Origin: Octopus bimaculoides
Lineage: Eukaryota
Assembly: GCF_001194135.2 (NCBI RefSeq)
Contig: NC_068998.1
Location: forward strand, 50,972,717 to 51,036,716
Reading direction: 5' to 3'
DNA length: 64,000 nt
Below the pieces are notes generated by a model, which had not been told where the DNA came from, made no database searches, and saw nothing but the letters and a program-made list of their open reading frames with translations. The translations under genes were made by a program, and so were the position numbers. Of this stretch, positions 38,935 to 58,423 are shown one piece after another (within the stretch, counting starts at the first letter, position 1; each line of letters starts with the position of its first letter).

Positions 38935-41900
38935 TCTGTTATTGGTGACAAAGGCCGAACAGAAAATAAATAGGGACAATAAATTATAAGGGACAAGTGG
39001 GGCGCTGAATAATGCCGTGTATACAATAAGTAACACAAGACAATAAGTAACAAAACAAATAAAGACAATTTAACAATAAAAATTCCCCCAAAGGTGGCAG
39101 TTCCTCACAGGGACAACTGCAGAATCCCACAGGAGCTGGTTATTCCGACTGTCAGGTGCACCTCAGAAATAATAATTATAATCGAGTGAACAGCATTGAG
39201 AGACCTGTAGGAAAATGAGCAACCAAGAAAAAAAAAAGTAATGTTTTGTTGTTCTCGTTAGTCCCTGCAACGACGATATTCGTCTCGTTCCGATACATAT
39301 ATTGTATTTTCTAAAAGTGAGTATACATTTAGTATGATACACAGATGTCGATTCCCAAAATAAATTTACTGATTTTTCCTTCGTTATTATTATTCTCAGT
39401 CATATTTGTTTTTTTAAATAAACCCCTTTTACTCTTCTCTTTCTTGTTTCAGTCGTTGGGTTACAGACATGTTGGAGCTTCAACTCACTGAGTAAGCAGA
39501 TAATAACAATCCGCACTCTTTACTCTAAAGTGTGGTATCTTTTTATCGGATTCTATATATCGAACTGTACAGTCACGTAACATAAACAAAAGCCATATGT
39601 TTTTTAAAGAGTAACCTAGACACCATTACCACAGAACACAGCAGTAAAGCCACATATATTACACACACACACACACACACATACACACACACACATATAC
39701 ACATGATATACACACATACATTTAGATCGNNNNNNNNNNNNNNNNNNNNNNNNNNNNNNNNNNNNNNNNNNNNNNNNNNNNNNNNNNNNNNNNNNNNNNN
39801 NNNNNNNNNNNNNNNNNNNNNNNNNNNNNNNNNNNNNNNNNNNNNNNNNNNNNNNNNNNNNNNNNTATATATGCATTTGCCTATCTGAATGTTTAAGACA
39901 AATATCTGAAATTTTTATCTCAGTCCAAATTTTATTAATCTTTAACTCATATACGAGCGGAAAAAACAAACAGTTGTACTATATACTGGAGTTTTATCGC
40001 CATTAAAATTCTCGTATATACACACACATATACATGCACACACATGTCTGTAATATACGGTATGGGATGTGTGATATGTTTTAGAGTATTTATAGGATTT
40101 TGTACAAGTTTCATGTGAGTGAAATGTATTTAATATATATTCTATGTTTTTTTATTGCCATATTCCATCCGATGAAGAACTCAATCGTAAACGCCGAGGT
40201 TAGTGATGTTTTCTACTTACACTACACACCATATAGTTTACGGTATACTTTGCATATTTAGATACCGATCGTAAATAGATAGAATTCTCTCGGTATGCAA
40301 CTGTAGTGTAGAATGAAGCACAATACATATTGCAGTATTAATAAGAGAAAAGTTATTTCTATATAGCTGGAATACAAGTACTAATTGAAGATATAATAGG
40401 ATGAAAGTTGTTTATAATAGAAAAATAATCTACAGTATTAATATGGACCCGTTTGTATATTGTTTATATTGCTTTTAATTGTGTTTATTTTTTAAATGCA
40501 ATATGTATGTACATTCAGGTAGAACAATGTCTAGAAATGTGATGTATTCGTATCGAGAGCGAAAATCGATTCCGTATTAAAATTAGTTCACAAGTGGGCT
40601 GAAATCATTGTAAATATTTTAGAAAGTATGTTCGTTATTGCTAGAATAAATAGATGTAGTGTATCTAGATTAACGCCAATCTGCGTTAATCTAGGTATTA
40701 TCAAGGTGTGTTAGGGTTTAATTTAGTCCCACAGCTAGCTATATCTGAGACTGTGGGAGACGCAAATGTGATGTCTTTTAAGCGTGATCTTCCTTGGATA
40801 TTTCATAAAGAAGCTACGTTTTATATATGAATAGTTTTAAAATATTGAGTATGAGATATATGGTTGTTATAATTCATTTCTTATTGAAATCTACTTAGTT
40901 GTAGCAAAGAGGAAAAGTTTTTCCAGTAGACGTTTTACGTGTTTTAAGATAAATAATATATCAACAGATGTTAATACATATAATTAGTCAATAAATTAGA
41001 ATATTTTCGGATGTCAATTATAGTCATAATTGTAGTGAGTCACCATTTTATGACTTCTCCAGAGCCAATGTAAAATGGTTGCTAACATAATATAAGATCT
41101 AGTTTGTAATATCAATATCTCTCTTAAAATATAGAAGCATCTAATTTGGTATTATTAACACGGCAATTGTTGTTTCTATTTTAGACGAGAGGCCAGTCGT
41201 TTTGAGGGGAGGGGGATAGTCAATACTACCGATCCTAGTACATGATGACAACTTTATTTTAACGACTACAGACAAAAGGCAAAGTTGACATCGGCTGAAT
41301 GGTAATTTAGAACATAAAGAGAGAGAACAAACAGAATTTACTTGTTCCATCGCTCTAACAATTCTATCAACCCTCCGCCCCCACCAATAAGACACGTATT
41401 CTGTTGTTTTTAAATCACATCAAGGAACATCAAATAAGTATTAAATTTTAAAATATTGGATTGGTGCATAATTATTGCGGTTTTTTTTTTTTTTAACAAA
41501 TTTTATTCAACAAAAACAATAACAATGTTTAACAAAAAAACATCTTTAAATGACGGTCTGACCTTCTGCCAAGCAAATGGGAAGCAGTAATTGAAGTAGA
41601 TGGTGAATATGCTCCGGAATAATCATTTAAAGATGTTTTTGTTACATGTCGGTATTGTTTTTGTTGAATAAAAAGCCGCAATAATTATGCACCAACCCAA
41701 TAATAATGACATTTGGTTTAAGAAAAATTATCGAAATATAAATAATCATATCTGGGTCAATATATTAAATAATTCATGTATATTTTCGTATTCATATAAT
41801 ATTAAAAAAACAAGGAAATTGTCAGCGGTTTAATAATTAGAAACTGTTAAAGAAAACTAACAAAGCAATCTTCACTCACAACAATTTCTGCTCCACAAAC

Positions 41901-56430: not shown

Positions 56431-58423
56431 AGTGTGCATTAGTTTCTGCGCGTGTTTTTTTGTGTGCATGGTTACATGAATAAACACACGTATTCCAAAT
56501 CATTCAACCTTTATATTTAACGAAGTTTTTGCAGAATGAATTCTTGCTGGGCTGTTTAGGTCACTGCTTTAATTTAATACTGTTTCAATCTCCTTCACCG
56601 AGTTTTTACCGTTCGGCTGTTACCCACCGATATCAATGAAATAATTATTCACGTTTGCTTATATATCGCGAAAAGAAATTCGTTCAAGAAGGTTGCACGT
56701 TCATGACAGGCCCAGTTAAGGGCGAAATATATCTAATATTGCCATGACTTACTGCTGTGATGACGCTCTTTTATCTGAGATATAAATTGTCTTTTAAATA
56801 CAACATTATTATGAAGAATGTTTTACTGATCCAATTGTACAGATTCATGTCTTCAAACGATGTGTATGAATTGTATAAATTTTGTATGATACACATATCT
56901 CGAGTTTCAAATTAAATTTTCATTATTTTAAACCGTTACTATATTTCTCAATCATTTTCATCATTCCGTGTTTATATTCTTCTAGTTATTTCAGTGATTG
57001 TTCTGCAGAAATGCTGGGGACACAGACCAGTTTGTAAGTAGATCATAACTACGTTCATCTGGATTATTCCAAGCATTACCAATGTGTGTTGGGGCTGAAT
57101 TAGTTTCACAGCTACATCTGAGAGCTTGAAAGAGACGTAAATGTGATGGCGTTTAAGTATGTTCTTATTCGAATATTCTGTGACGTGCGATGCACATCAT
57201 ACACTAATAGTTTTACAATATCGAGTCTGTGTTATTTATCATAACTCATTTTGGAATTTATAGTTGTAACAAACGGGGAGATACTTTCCACCAGACGTTT
57301 ACGTGTTTTAAGATAAACAATATATCAACAGACGTTTGTAAATTGTTAATACATATCAATAGTGAATAAATTAGAAGATTTTCAGTTGTGTATTACAGTC
57401 ATAATTGTAATGAGGCACCATTTTATGATTTCTGCGACATGAACGTAAAATGATTGTTAACATAAGAGTAATTTAGTAATATCAAAATATCCCTCTATTT
57501 GTAGACGCACCTAATTTGATAATATTAAAACACGGCACGATCATCTCATTTGTAAGACACGATTCTAATTTAGGTCGAAGAATATTAGTTTTGATGGGAA
57601 GGGGGTACACGGTACTATTCACCCCAATACCTGAGGAATATTTTAATTTCGAGACTTCGGATGGATGGAAAGCAAATGCATCATTACCAGAATGTGAACT
57701 TGGAACGTAAAGAGCGAGAAGAACTATCACAAGGTATTTTTTTCTGTTGCTATCACAATTCTGTTAATTCGACAGCACGAAATTGATAATGACACTGACA
57801 ATTTCCAGCTGATATCGCGGATTCAGACTGGAATTAGTGTAATTTATACTATATTTCTTAATATTTATTCTGTCTGGAAAGAATATTAAATAATACATTT
57901 TAATATGCAGATCGTCCTGATGTGGGCCATTGCTTTGATGAAGCGTATTGCCCAGGAGCCGAGAAAAAGTATCATTTTGATTATTACAGGGAAATTTTCT
58001 GCTCGTACGTATCCTTTTATTCTAACTATTAGTATTATTTCTCATTTAATATTAATTTAATATTTTCTAAATAAGCAAGTGCGCAATAAACTCTTTAAAA
58101 CTAATATTTCTTTATTGAGCACGCTGCTATAAGTTGTTGGTCAGATTGTAAGTGAATTTAAACATTAAACACACGATCAAATATCATAAAGCAAATTATG
58201 CCACGAAAAGATTTGCCCACAAACATCAAACATATAACGCCATACATTTTATGAACTAATTATATTGACCGAATTCTGTTTGTCTTGCAGACATATACTA
58301 AAGTATAAAGATTGTGCTAAGAAGAACAAAGATCAGCTGTGTATTGAGGTGCTGGATTCCTATTTCAAGTCGGTTTACTTCTGTCCTTGTATGAGATTTT
58401 TGTTTCTTTGCAACATACAATGA
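54903..58423 (+). CDS. Gene C: secreted cysteine-rich small protein, 99 aa, join(54903..54936,56995..57033,57911..58004,58291..58423)
   Basis: Spliced open frame: MKYSLYFLLIIVIVLQKCWG-HRPVYRPDVGHCFDEAYCPGAEKKYHFDYYREIFCSHILKYKDCAKKNKDQLCIEVLDSYFKSVYFCPCMRFLFLCNIQ*. Best-formed signal peptide of the three, 8 mature Cys, TATA at 54834, ATTAAA at 58515. No gaps in introns 2-3, so this copy defines the exon structure. Confidence 0.85.
55295..55530 (+). mobile_element. PLE GIY-YIG endonuclease relic, C-terminal half, in gene C intron 1
   Basis: TKLASHV*xLK...IKWRIIEKSMPYVNGSK*CNFCVAE...LLNSRYEISSKCK matches LSKHIWxLK...IKWxI...CNLCLxE...LLNKRxELxSKCRH. Confidence 0.8.
56995..57033 (+). CDS. Gene C exon 2 (39 nt, VIVLQKCWGHRPV)
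   Basis: Acceptor TAGTTATTTCAG, donor T|GTAAGT. Confidence 0.8.
57911..58004 (+). CDS. Gene C exon 3 (94 nt)
   Basis: Acceptor AATATGCAG, donor TC|GTACGT. Confidence 0.85.
58291..58423 (+). CDS. Gene C exon 4 (to TGA)
   Basis: Acceptor TTTGTCTTGCAG; 5 Cys including CPC. Confidence 0.8.

What the first reader, a model, noticed from the sequence alone, without database searches (positions are those of the whole stretch)
39443..57033. Signal-peptide exon 2 appears to be an exonised antisense SINE/CR1 tail
Seen: the reverse complement of the SINE family 2 tail (in-window copies 2841-2890 and 13835-13890) is CTTGTTTCAG|TCATTTGACTGCGGCCATGCTGGAGC. It aligns without gaps to the acceptor plus exon 2 of gene A (39443-39478, 28/36 identical), gene B (from 48091, 26/37) and gene C (from 56986, 25/34). 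Gene A's pyrimidine tract TTTTACTCTT also matches the element's simple-repeat tail. In phase the SINE reads V-I-stop-L-R-P-C-W-S, against VVGLQTCWS (A), VNGLQTFRG (B) and VIVLQKCWG (C); the stop is repaired in all three. The SINE also carries TTT|GTAAGC further in (about 2944-2950), a possible source of the donor. Established: antisense retroposon tails supply 3' splice sites in exonisation. Inference: a retroposon supplied the acceptor and the signal-peptidase cleavage region before the gene triplicated, possibly creating or improving secretion.
Basis: partly seen in the sequence, partly recalled or inferred. Interest (0 to 1): 0.92.

Follow-up and report, generated by a model that had tools for sequence, protein, structure and literature searches.

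The report
Octopus signal-peptide exon from retroposon tail
In a cluster of at least six small secreted-protein genes found only in octopus, the second exon, which completes the secretion signal, and its splice acceptor come from the reverse-strand tail of a very common jumping element; this is a clear invertebrate case of a process known mainly from mammals.

Summary
The window is Octopus bimaculoides chromosome CM046618.1. Genes A, B and C are LOC128249908, LOC128249863 and an unannotated copy. They belong to a cluster of at least six paralogues: D lies on the minus strand of the window, and E and F lie about 77 kb further on. All encode small six-cysteine secreted proteins with no relatives outside Octopus.

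An HMM built from 10 genuine retroposon tails finds the exon-2 acceptors as its best non-repeat hits (F 6e-8, A 3e-4). A profile of the exon-2 family finds SINE tails in return (1e-6 to 8e-3). Among 248 acceptor-like sites, the background scores 17±3 of 50 identities (maximum 24), while the six exon-2 sites score 32-41.

The similarity covers only the ~50-nt tail module that SINEs share with a LINE.

The effect on secretion and the state in outgroup species remain untested. This is a new, well-documented member of a known kind (antisense retroposon exonisation) and of moderate interest.

The parts
39429..39478 (-). Gene A: segment homologous to the retroposon 3' tail module. The element's sense strand is '-', so it is antisense to the gene. 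The T-rich tract 39429-39452 is the polypyrimidine tract plus CAG; 39453-39478 is the first 26 nt of exon 2.
39453..39491 (+). Gene A (LOC128249908) exon 2: 39 nt, phase 1-1, encodes (V)VGLQTCWSFNSL. This is the end of the hydrophobic core plus the likely signal-peptidase site C-W-S|F.
   Evidence: RefSeq proteins P0001/P0002 contain MKYFLCICLLIV|VVGLQTCWSFNSL|K..; coordinates.
38348..38417 (+). Gene A exon 1 coding part. The conserved ATG is at 38381 (MKYFLCICLLIV), the exon ends in phase 1, and the donor is G|GTAAGT.
   Evidence: tblastn with P0002; alignment of the three promoter/exon-1 regions.
42073..42175 (+). Gene A exon 3 (K YLGMDYCLREKFCPEAWKKYPRGADEEDVDTFCG), phase 1 to 2. Exon 1 could splice directly to it in frame.
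   Evidence: The O. vulgaris model P0004 joins exon 1 directly to this exon.
42863..42960 (+). Gene A exon 4 (RLSMYIACSWKKGPWWCIKGLQFEYSALRVCF).
43426..43454 (+). Gene A last coding exon ((M)SKEKPKSR stop).
48070..48141 (+). Gene B (LOC128249863) exon 2 as annotated: 72 nt, phase 1-1, encodes [24 protein letters not shown]. An upstream acceptor at 48067-48069 is used, so the T-rich tract derived from the antisense tail (48079-48102) is itself translated as FILLLIL.
   Evidence: P0006/P0007 sequences; sequence. The tail consensus in this frame reads FILLLVSVI*LRPCWS (worked out by hand from the consensus).
48079..48128 (-). Gene B: segment homologous to the tail module (antisense to the gene).
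   Evidence: 36/50 identities; blastn 80.5% over 41 nt, E 1.9e-5 in the window; nhmmer E 0.27.
56971..57020 (-). Gene C: segment homologous to the tail module (antisense to the gene).
   Evidence: 36/50 identities; blastn E 0.003.
56995..57033 (+). Gene C exon 2: 39 nt, phase 1-1, encodes (V)IVLQKCWGHRPV. Exon 1 is 54903-54936, exon 3 about 57928-58020, exon 4 58291-58388. The gene is not annotated.
63661..63705 (-). Gene D (inverted paralogue) exon 2: 45 nt, phase 1-1, VVIGIPPLWYGIWK. The ancestral acceptor is mutated to TTGTAG, and an AG 6 nt upstream now serves as acceptor. The tail-like segment is 63723-63674. Exon 3 is 61989-61888 and exon 4 is 60824-60732.
   Evidence: 32/50 identities.
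13824..13890 (+). Reference copy of the retroposon tail module, at the end of a full SINE (about 13690-13900).
   Evidence: nhmmer E 1.7e-19; alignments.
2840..2899 (-). Second full SINE copy of the same family (about 2840-3035); its tail is antisense on the + strand.
7339..8352 (-). LINE remnant: RT-like ORFs 7942-8352 and 7523-7864, followed by the same tail module at 7395-7339. This shows the module is a LINE 3' end that the SINEs share.
   Evidence: ORFs; RVT_1 E 0.0026, below Pfam's cut-off; tail E 3.5e-11. The same arrangement occurs in O. vulgaris L003 (ORF 10001-10348, tail 10477-10532).

Best explanation
A retroposon 3' end of about 50 nt landed in antisense orientation in intron 1 of the founder gene, or was already there when the gene formed. 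This tail module, GGTGCTCCAGCATGGCCGCAGTCAAATGACTGAAACAAGTAAAAGAA(T)AAAAG, is shared by an abundant octopus LINE and several SINE families. The founder belonged to an Octopus-restricted family of small six-cysteine secreted proteins.

Read on the gene strand, the A-rich tail becomes a polypyrimidine tract (TTTTATTCTTTTACTTGTTT). The element's CTG becomes the CAG acceptor. The next ~26-30 nt become the 5' two-thirds of a 39-nt, phase 1-1 exon. One T->G change removed the element's in-frame TGA (giving GGA/GGG, Gly). The element's TGC TGG AGC still encodes the C-W-S/G motif just before the likely signal-peptidase cut.

The last ~10 nt of the exon and the GTAAG donor show no similarity to the element. 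They probably come from the sequence flanking a 5'-truncated insertion.

The new exon adds four hydrophobic residues and a polar cleavage region to the signal peptide begun by exon 1. It became constitutive and was inherited by all of the at least six tandem or inverted copies (A-F). Later the acceptor drifted: gene B moved to an AG 33 nt upstream and now translates the T-rich tail itself as FILLLIL, and gene D moved 6 nt upstream.

Shown: the homology, orientation, register, shared stop repair, use in RefSeq models and in-frame symmetry. Inferred: the order of events (a pre-existing exon 1 to exon 3 gene), a truncated insertion, and a benefit for secretion.
For: Exon 2 and its frame are used by RefSeq models:
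- Gene A, gene B and gene E all contain it.
- The window is identical to GCA_001194135.2.

Homology with the tail module:
- blastn with one SINE copy finds B, C and A among its hits in the window, and every stronger hit is a SINE copy or tail fragment.
- The tail HMM, built without any exon-2 sequence, gives F 6.2e-8, A 2.9e-4, E 0.018, B 0.27.
- The reciprocal family profile gives SINE tails at 1.2e-6 to 8e-3, all aligned to profile positions 8-57/63.
- The reversed-database decoy gives a best E of 1.8-7.
- In the acceptor-like control, exon-2 sites score 32-41/50 against a background maximum of 24/50; z = 5.0-8.0 overall and 4.2-6.2 for the exon part alone.

Paralogue F is an intermediate form:
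- It has 41/50 identities to the tail consensus, yet its upstream intron flank is homologous only to those of A, B and C, and it sits in an exon 1-2-3-4 series.

A single early event:
- The parsimony ancestor matches the tail at 38 certain and up to 43-44 possible positions of 50.
- All six copies share G at exon position 6 (the stop repair). The G->A at position 13 is a CpG transition that is also seen in a genuine SINE copy.

Nature of the module:
- The similarity ends where different SINE bodies diverge from each other.
- The module ends a LINE remnant in O. bimaculoides and also in O. vulgaris.
- There are 10 tail copies in 87 kb, against one gene cluster.

Exon properties:
- Exon lengths of 39, 45 and 72 nt are all phase 1-1.
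- An O. vulgaris model joins exon 1 to exon 3 in frame.
- The uncharged run grows from 10 to 14 residues (A), 9 to 13 (C) and 6 to 10 (E) when exon 2 is included.
Against: - No outgroup or empty site was examined, so 'added to an existing gene' is not distinguished from 'present since the gene was born'.
- The individual E-values for B, C and D are weak (0.27 to 19). The six sites are paralogues, so they count as one evolutionary event, not six.
- The exon-only profile gives no significant hit to tails on its own. Significance depends on taking intron and exon parts together, or on the alignment anchored at the AG.
- There are no RNA reads. Exon use rests on Gnomon/RefSeq models. Genes C, D and F are unannotated, and F lacks a good donor.
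- No signal-peptide predictor or secretion assay was run.
Confidence: 0.85

Rival explanations
1. The homology is real, but nothing was 'added'. The tail was already part of the locus when this orphan gene family first became a gene, or it replaced the 5' part and acceptor of an older exon 2. In that case there was never a functional form running from exon 1 straight to exon 3.
For: - The family has no relatives outside Octopus among 1.84 billion representative proteins, has no Pfam domain and no structural match. That fits a young gene that could have been assembled around repeats.
- The last ~10 nt of exon 2 and the donor are not SINE-like, which is also what a partial replacement of an older exon would leave.
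Against: - Exon 2 is a symmetric phase 1-1 cassette in every copy, and skipping it keeps the frame.
- One O. vulgaris model does skip it.
- Exon 1 alone already encodes a 9-10-residue hydrophobic core in A, B and C, though only 6 residues in E.
- None of these points is decisive.
Confidence: 0.1
2. The resemblance is chance combined with convergence. Any 3' splice site has a T-rich tract and a CAG, and the reader found the best of many possible alignments by eye.
For: - The intron half of the match is low-complexity and functionally constrained.
- The exon-only profile search finds tails only at E >= 0.2-6.
- The six sites are not independent of each other.
Against: - 229 other acceptor-like sites in the same DNA reach at most 24/50 overall and 12/26 in the exon part, against 32-41 and 15-19 for the exon-2 sites.
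- Binomial P for the exon part alone, anchored at the AG, is 1e-7 to 2e-4.
- The HMM E-values are 6e-8 and 3e-4, and the calibration was checked on a decoy.
- The reciprocal search recovers seven tails.
- Copy F is 84% identical to the tail consensus over 50 nt.
Confidence: 0.03
3. The SINE-like look is secondary. Separate SINE insertions, or gene conversion from nearby SINE copies, hit the exon-2 boundary in individual paralogues, F above all, after the duplications.
For: - F is more SINE-like than the other copies.
- SINE tails are everywhere in this DNA, including a young antisense copy in intron 1 of gene E (L002 10722-10791).
Against: - All six copies have the same register and orientation.
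- All six share derived changes relative to the element: G at exon position 6 in all six, and A at position 13 in five of six.
- The flanks of A, B, C and F are homologous right up to the T-rich tract.
- No SINE body follows the module in any copy.
Confidence: 0.02

Closest known systems
Alu-type exonisation in primates: an antisense Alu in an intron, whose poly-T acts as polypyrimidine tract and whose internal AG acts as 3' splice site. This is established knowledge; reviewed and quantified in PMC2879366.
   Same: - Antisense orientation.
- The A-rich tail read as a polypyrimidine tract, with the acceptor AG supplied by the element.
- A short, symmetric internal exon.
- A point mutation was needed to open the reading frame.
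   Different: - The host is a cephalopod. The element is a LINE/SINE 3' tail module, not a 7SL dimer.
- The exon appears constitutive in the RefSeq models and lies in the coding sequence of a signal peptide. Most Alu exons are minor alternative forms, often in UTRs or disruptive.
- The exon has been kept through at least five rounds of gene duplication.
- Only the acceptor side is derived from the element.
MIR/LINE-2 and other old SINE or LINE-tail exonisations that became constitutive coding exons in vertebrates (own knowledge; general survey in PMC2911107).
   Same: An old, diverged retroposon fragment of about 50 nt, recognisable only across the part that is under selection, and fixed as a coding exon.
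   Different: According to PMC2911107, TE exonisation in invertebrates is only anecdotal, and the authors link it to intron length. Octopus has long, SINE-rich introns; SINEs make up about 11.6% of the O. vulgaris genome (PMC13282606). No cephalopod case turned up in my literature searches.
The Schistosoma japonicum lineage-specific gene family with a shared signal sequence, spread with the help of flanking repetitive elements (PMC3434034).
   Same: A lineage-restricted, multi-copy family of secreted proteins whose signal-sequence region has a history linked to repeats.
   Different: In Schistosoma the repeats are proposed to mediate duplication by recombination. Here the repeat sequence itself is the splice site and part of the coding signal peptide.

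Membership tests
Exonised antisense retroposon (TE-derived internal coding exon) | Statistically significant sequence homology between the exon plus splice site and the element's consensus | tested here: met
   Tail HMM gives F 6.2e-8 and A 2.9e-4. The reciprocal profile gives 1.2e-6 to 8e-3. The decoy gives a best E of 1.8. In the acceptor-like control z = 5-8.
Exonised antisense retroposon (TE-derived internal coding exon) | The element is antisense to the gene, its A-rich tail serves as the polypyrimidine tract and its own AG serves as acceptor | tested here: met
   All six sites align in the same register with the element's CAG on the acceptor AG. In D the acceptor has since shifted 6 nt, and B uses an AG 33 nt upstream.
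Exonised antisense retroposon (TE-derived internal coding exon) | The exon is present in mature mRNA | tested here: inconclusive
   The exon is present in the RefSeq/Gnomon proteins of genes A, B and E. It is absent from one O. vulgaris automatic model.
Exonised antisense retroposon (TE-derived internal coding exon) | An orthologue or outgroup that lacks the insertion (empty site), giving the polarity of the event | not testable with these tools
   The DNA of the O. vulgaris locus could not be fetched because the gene range was too long. No other cephalopod genome was reachable.
   There is no homology to SINE bodies beyond about exon position 30. The body HMM gives 0 hits. Local alignment against shuffles gives z from -1.4 to 2.3. 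The full-length SINE HMM alignments for A, B, C, E and F stop at position 26-30. This feature is not required for membership; exons with one TE-derived splice site are common.
   There are 10 copies in 87 kb, attached to at least two different bodies. The module follows RT-like ORFs in the window (7339-8352) and in O. vulgaris L003. The RVT_1 hit is weak (E 0.0026, below Pfam's cut-off).
   Homologues of the LINE C-terminal ORF carry no informative names or Pfam domains. No RT phylogeny was made.
   I only noticed by eye a box-A/box-B-like TAACTTAGYGGTTCGG in copies 13700 and 3024.
Sec-type N-terminal signal peptide | A basic n-region, a hydrophobic core of 7-15 residues, and a polar c-region with small residues at -3 and -1 | tested here: inconclusive
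   By inspection, gene A has MK + YFLCICLLIVVVGL + QTCWS|F. The -1 residue would be S or G in A, B, C, E and F; D's motif (LWYG) differs. The candidate -3 residue is C, L or F. No predictor or assay was available.

The most novel reading that the evidence does not exclude
The antisense tail of this very abundant octopus LINE/SINE group may be a latent, ready-made secretion cassette. It carries a strong 3' splice site, and in one frame it reads FILLLVSVI-stop-LRPCWS, which is a hydrophobic core plus a cleavage-like motif, one point mutation away from an open frame. If so, it may have been recruited repeatedly across the genome, giving signal peptides to lineage-specific orphan proteins. Gene B, which now translates the tail itself as FILLLIL, would be one visible step of that process.
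Probability: 0.12. Interest if true: 0.75.

Novelty: new member of a known kind. Interest (0 to 1): 0.45.

Why it matters
TE exonisation is regarded as a largely mammalian or vertebrate way of making new coding sequence, with only anecdotal invertebrate cases, and has been tied to long introns (PMC2911107). Octopus genomes have long, SINE-laden introns. This locus is a clean, datable example in which a retroposon tail became a constitutive coding exon, and specifically part of a signal peptide. That exon has been kept through the expansion of an orphan family of secreted proteins. The locus provides a concrete assay system (constructs with and without exon 2, and the acceptor shifts in B and D). 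It also gives a search image, the antisense tail HMM, for asking how much of the octopus's lineage-specific secretome was built this way.

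Tried and rejected
- Short-exon model. I considered a shorter exon 2 starting at a second CAG 14 nt downstream. I rejected it once the RefSeq proteins showed an intervening exon 3 and confirmed the long exon and its frame.
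- O. vulgaris orthologous locus. The DNA was not returned because the gene model spans 141 kb.
- SINE body or donor homology in the 3' end of exon 2 and in intron 2. By eye I saw TATCGG, ACGCAC and AGTCGAA-like matches at similar offsets. The body HMM gave no hits, and local alignment against 300 dinucleotide shuffles gave z from -1.4 to 2.3. The D-specific alternative register found by the full-length HMM was only 4.8 bits. I treat all of this as noise.
- Exon-only profile search. No significant tail hits.
- LINE clade. Homologues of the LINE C-terminal ORF have no informative names. Locus L004, from an unidentified ENA assembly, has no match to the 29-nt tail core at up to 3 mismatches and was dropped.
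- Protein function. No Pfam family: only a sub-threshold RGM_N hit at E 0.014 for E. The AlphaFold model is all-helical with pLDDT 72, and it has no PDB fold match at E < 1.

Full report
WHAT THE WINDOW IS. The window is AT-rich (35% GC) and full of assembly gaps. It is identical, gaps included, to Octopus bimaculoides GCA_001194135.2 chromosome CM046618.1. Locus L001 equals window 28348-53454.

THE GENES. A profile search returned the RefSeq protein of gene A, LOC128249908 (P0001 is isoform X2, 112 aa; P0002 is X1, 119 aa). Its sequence reads MIGCRCIGKFTMKYFLCICLLIV | VVGLQTCWSFNSL | K(LNRKRRE)YLGMDYCLREKFCPEAWKKYPRGADEEDVDTFCG | RLSMYIACSWKKGPWWCIKGLQFEYSALRVCF | MSKEKPKSR.

Mapped onto the window, the exons of gene A are:
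- exon 1: 38348-38417, ending in phase 1;
- exon 2: 39453-39491, 39 nt, phase 1-1;
- exon 3: 42073-42175;
- exon 4: 42863-42960;
- exon 5: 43426-43454.

My own first model used a shorter exon 2 starting at a second CAG. It was an artefact of having missed exon 3, and I dropped it.

Gene B is LOC128249863 (P0006/P0007). Its model uses an acceptor 33 nt further upstream, so its exon 2 is 48070-48141 (72 nt, still phase 1-1) and reads [24 protein letters not shown].

Gene C is not annotated but has the same exon series: exon 1 54903-54936, exon 2 56995-57033, exon 3 about 57928-58020, exon 4 58291-58388.

- D lies inverted on the minus strand of the window: exon 2 63705-63661, exon 3 61989-61888, exon 4 60824-60732.
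- E is LOC128249871 (P0003), about 77 kb beyond the window, in locus L002, with exon 2 at L002 11430-11468.
- F is unannotated, in L002: exon 1 15230-15265, exon 2 from 17241, exon 3 21935-22045, exon 4 22795-22896.

The proteins are about 100 aa with six conserved cysteines after the signal peptide. They have no Pfam family. They have no relatives outside Octopus among 1.84 billion representative proteins. The predicted fold is all-helical (pLDDT 72) and has no PDB match.

THE ELEMENT. The part that matters is the last ~50 nt: GGTGCTCCAGCATGGCCGCAGTCAAATGACTGAAACAAGTAAAAGAA(T)AAAAG. This module is shared by copies whose bodies differ.

The same module also follows a LINE remnant carrying reverse-transcriptase-like ORFs. 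In the window the ORFs are 7942-8352 and 7523-7864 (-) and the tail is 7395-7339. The same arrangement occurs in O. vulgaris: in L003 a homologous ORF at 10001-10348 is followed by the tail at 10477-10532, and two SINE tails lie nearby. The module is thus a LINE 3' end borrowed by SINEs, and it is present in both species. I could not show that the LINE belongs to the CR1 clade.

There are 10 tail copies in 87 kb. For context, SINEs make up about 11.6% of the O. vulgaris genome, with bursts dated to about 18 My and about 56 My, and the O. vulgaris / O. bimaculoides split is dated to 13-33 My (PMC13282606).

IS THE MATCH REAL? Five independent checks say it is not chance.

1. blastn with a single SINE copy against the window lists exon 2 of B (E 1.9e-5), C (0.003) and A (0.003). 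Every stronger hit is a SINE copy or tail fragment, and one further tail fragment (8327-8360) ranks between B and C.

2. An HMM of 10 genuine tails, with no exon-2 sequence in it, was searched over window+L002. After the tails themselves it gives F 6.2e-8, A 2.9e-4, E 0.018, B 0.27, C 1.5 and D 19. One other hit (0.12) falls between E and B.

3. In the other direction, a profile of A-E (-30 to +130) finds F (2.4e-10). The next seven hits are all genuine SINE tails, at E 1.2e-6 to 8e-3. Each aligns to profile positions 8-57/63, which run from the T-rich tract to exon position ~27-33.

4. On the reversed database, which has the same composition and the same low-complexity sequence, the best E-values are 1.8-7. 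The E-values are therefore honest.

5. The obvious confounder is that any acceptor is T-rich and ends in CAG. I collected all 248 sites in the same DNA that have YAG preceded by at least 70% pyrimidines, and counted ungapped identities to the antisense tail consensus anchored at the AG:
- The 229 background sites give 17.2 +/- 3.0 of 50, with a maximum of 24.
- The top 13 sites are seven true tails and the six exon-2 acceptors: F 41; A, B and C 36; D and E 32.
- For the 26 exonic positions alone the background is 6.1 +/- 2.1 (maximum 12), against 15-19 for the exon-2 sites. That is z = 4.2-6.2 and binomial P from 1e-7 to 2e-4.

Paralogue F is especially telling. It is 84% identical to the tail over 50 nt (22/24 intron, 19/26 exon), which is as good as many true SINE copies. 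Yet its upstream intron flank is homologous only to the flanks of A, B and C, and it sits between an exon 1 and an exon 3 of the family. It is a paralogue that has kept the ancestral look, not a separate insertion.

ONE EVENT, BEFORE THE DUPLICATIONS. All six copies have the same orientation and register. Parsimony reconstruction gives ttttattctt.ta.tt.tttcag|TCATTGG.CTGCAGACAT.TTGGGGA. This matches the tail at 38 certain and up to 43-44 possible positions of 50.

All six copies have G at exon position 6, which turns the element's in-frame TGA into a glycine codon. The G->A at position 13 is a CpG transition that is also seen in a true SINE copy, L002 770.

WHERE THE HOMOLOGY ENDS. Alignments stop at about exon position 26-32. 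That is exactly where different SINE bodies stop resembling each other.

The rest of exon 2, the donor and intron 2 show nothing. A SINE-body HMM gives no hit. Local alignments are no better than dinucleotide shuffles, with z from -1.4 to 2.3.

The simplest reading is that a 5'-truncated, tail-only copy provided the acceptor side, and ordinary flanking sequence provided the donor.

WHAT IT DOES. Exon 1 encodes MK + YFLCICLLIV. Exon 2 adds VVGL and then QTCWS, followed by FNSL. The TGC TGG AGC of the element is still C-W-S in gene A and W-G or W-S in most of the other copies. Most copies have a small residue (S or G) where the -1 position of a signal-peptidase site would be.

With exon 2 the uncharged run grows from 10 to 14 residues (A), 9 to 13 (C) and 6 to 10 (E).

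Exon 2 is symmetric in every copy, so skipping it keeps the frame. An O. vulgaris automatic model (CAI9735818.1, P0004) in fact joins MKYFLSICLLIV directly to EYLGLDYC. I cannot tell whether that reflects skipping, absence of the exon or a missed small exon.

In the frame used by gene B, the antisense tail consensus reads FILLLVSVI*LRPCWS, and B's extended exon reads [16 protein letters not shown]. In B, then, even the former A-rich tail is now part of the hydrophobic core.

That exon 2 improves secretion is an inference from these residues. No predictor or assay was available.

GAPS. The listed gaps (39730-39865, 48504-49420, 52102-52597, 54053-54062, 56329-56338) lie in introns or between genes and are bordered by microsatellites. 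The nearest one is 238 nt from an exon 2. The chromosome-level record has the same gaps, and reads were not available, so continuity across them is untested. The RefSeq models are colinear and in frame across them, and none of the evidence used here spans a gap.

COMPARISON AND VERDICT. Mechanistically this is classic antisense-retroposon exonisation: the tail becomes the polypyrimidine tract, an internal AG becomes the acceptor, and a point mutation opens the frame. It is best known from Alu elements.

It differs from the usual cases in several ways:
- it occurs in a cephalopod;
- it derives from a LINE/SINE tail module;
- it appears constitutive;
- it lies inside a signal peptide;
- it has been kept in at least six paralogues.

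A survey found only anecdotal TE exonisation in invertebrates and linked the process to intron length (PMC2911107). My searches found no cephalopod case.

I rate it a new member of a known kind, with moderate interest (0.45).

Noticed in passing
window 48070-48141: Both RefSeq isoforms of gene B use an acceptor 33 nt upstream of the ancestral one, whose AG context is weakened to TTTTAG. As a result the former polypyrimidine tract is translated as [10 protein letters not shown], which gives a 21-residue uncharged stretch. That is long for a signal peptide and might act as a membrane anchor.
   Followed up: partly
window 63661-63723 (minus strand): In the inverted paralogue D the ancestral TTTCAG acceptor has become TTGTAG, and an AG 6 nt upstream is in the right position and frame. 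This makes the exon 45 nt instead of 39. D's exon 1 probably lies beyond the end of the window.
   Followed up: partly
window 53527-53821 versus 58793-59087: The alternative last exon of B and C (FSYSCQFRSCE) and its surroundings are 99% identical over 295 nt, whereas the rest of B and C is 80-90% identical. This suggests local gene conversion or a very recent patch duplication.
   Followed up: partly
window about 49,700 (within ORF 49576-49761): Gene B has an extra coding exon ([17 protein letters not shown]) between exons 2 and 3 that A and E lack. It lies next to a microsatellite that is repetitive in translation (LSIY repeats), just after the 917-nt gap. It may be another recently recruited exon.
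   Followed up: no
L002 17241-17330: Paralogue F has no canonical donor at the end of exon 2 (GGGGGT|TTACAC), and a CA microsatellite follows directly. NCBI does not annotate it. It is probably a pseudogene, yet it is the copy most similar to the retroposon tail.
   Followed up: partly
L002 10722-10791: A younger, clearly recognisable antisense SINE tail, with part of its body, sits in intron 1 of gene E, about 640 nt upstream of the exonised one. It carries the same TTTAG|TCATTTGAC potential acceptor but is not used in the RefSeq model.
   Followed up: no
protein P0004 (O. vulgaris CAI9735818.1): This automatic gene model spans 141 kb and fuses the first two coding exons of the gene A orthologue (exon 1 and exon 3, with exon 2 skipped) to unrelated sequence. 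It is almost certainly a mis-annotation, but it is the only cross-species glimpse of the locus.
   Followed up: partly
window 7339-8352 (minus strand); L003 10001-10532: A LINE remnant with RT-like ORFs ends in a variant of the tail module (GCAGCTGCATGGCGG in the window copy and GCAGTTGCATGGCTG in the O. vulgaris copy, instead of GCAGTCAAATGACTG). The two species' copies are 67% identical at protein level. This LINE is a candidate partner of the SINEs.
   Followed up: partly
window 2776-2836; L002 2323-2374: A second repeat family (…GCTAAGTCGATTACATCGAYCYCA…) gives weak, non-significant matches (E 0.07 and 1.4) to the donor and the start of intron 2 of the exon-2 family profile. It could be chance, or the trace of another old repeat next to the exon.
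   Followed up: no
most assembly gaps in the window (for example 39660-39729, 48250-48503, 56150-56440): The assembly gaps are bordered by TA/CA/TACA microsatellites. The full SINE copies also carry such microsatellites at their 5' ends, so unresolved repeat arrays probably explain the gaps.
   Followed up: no
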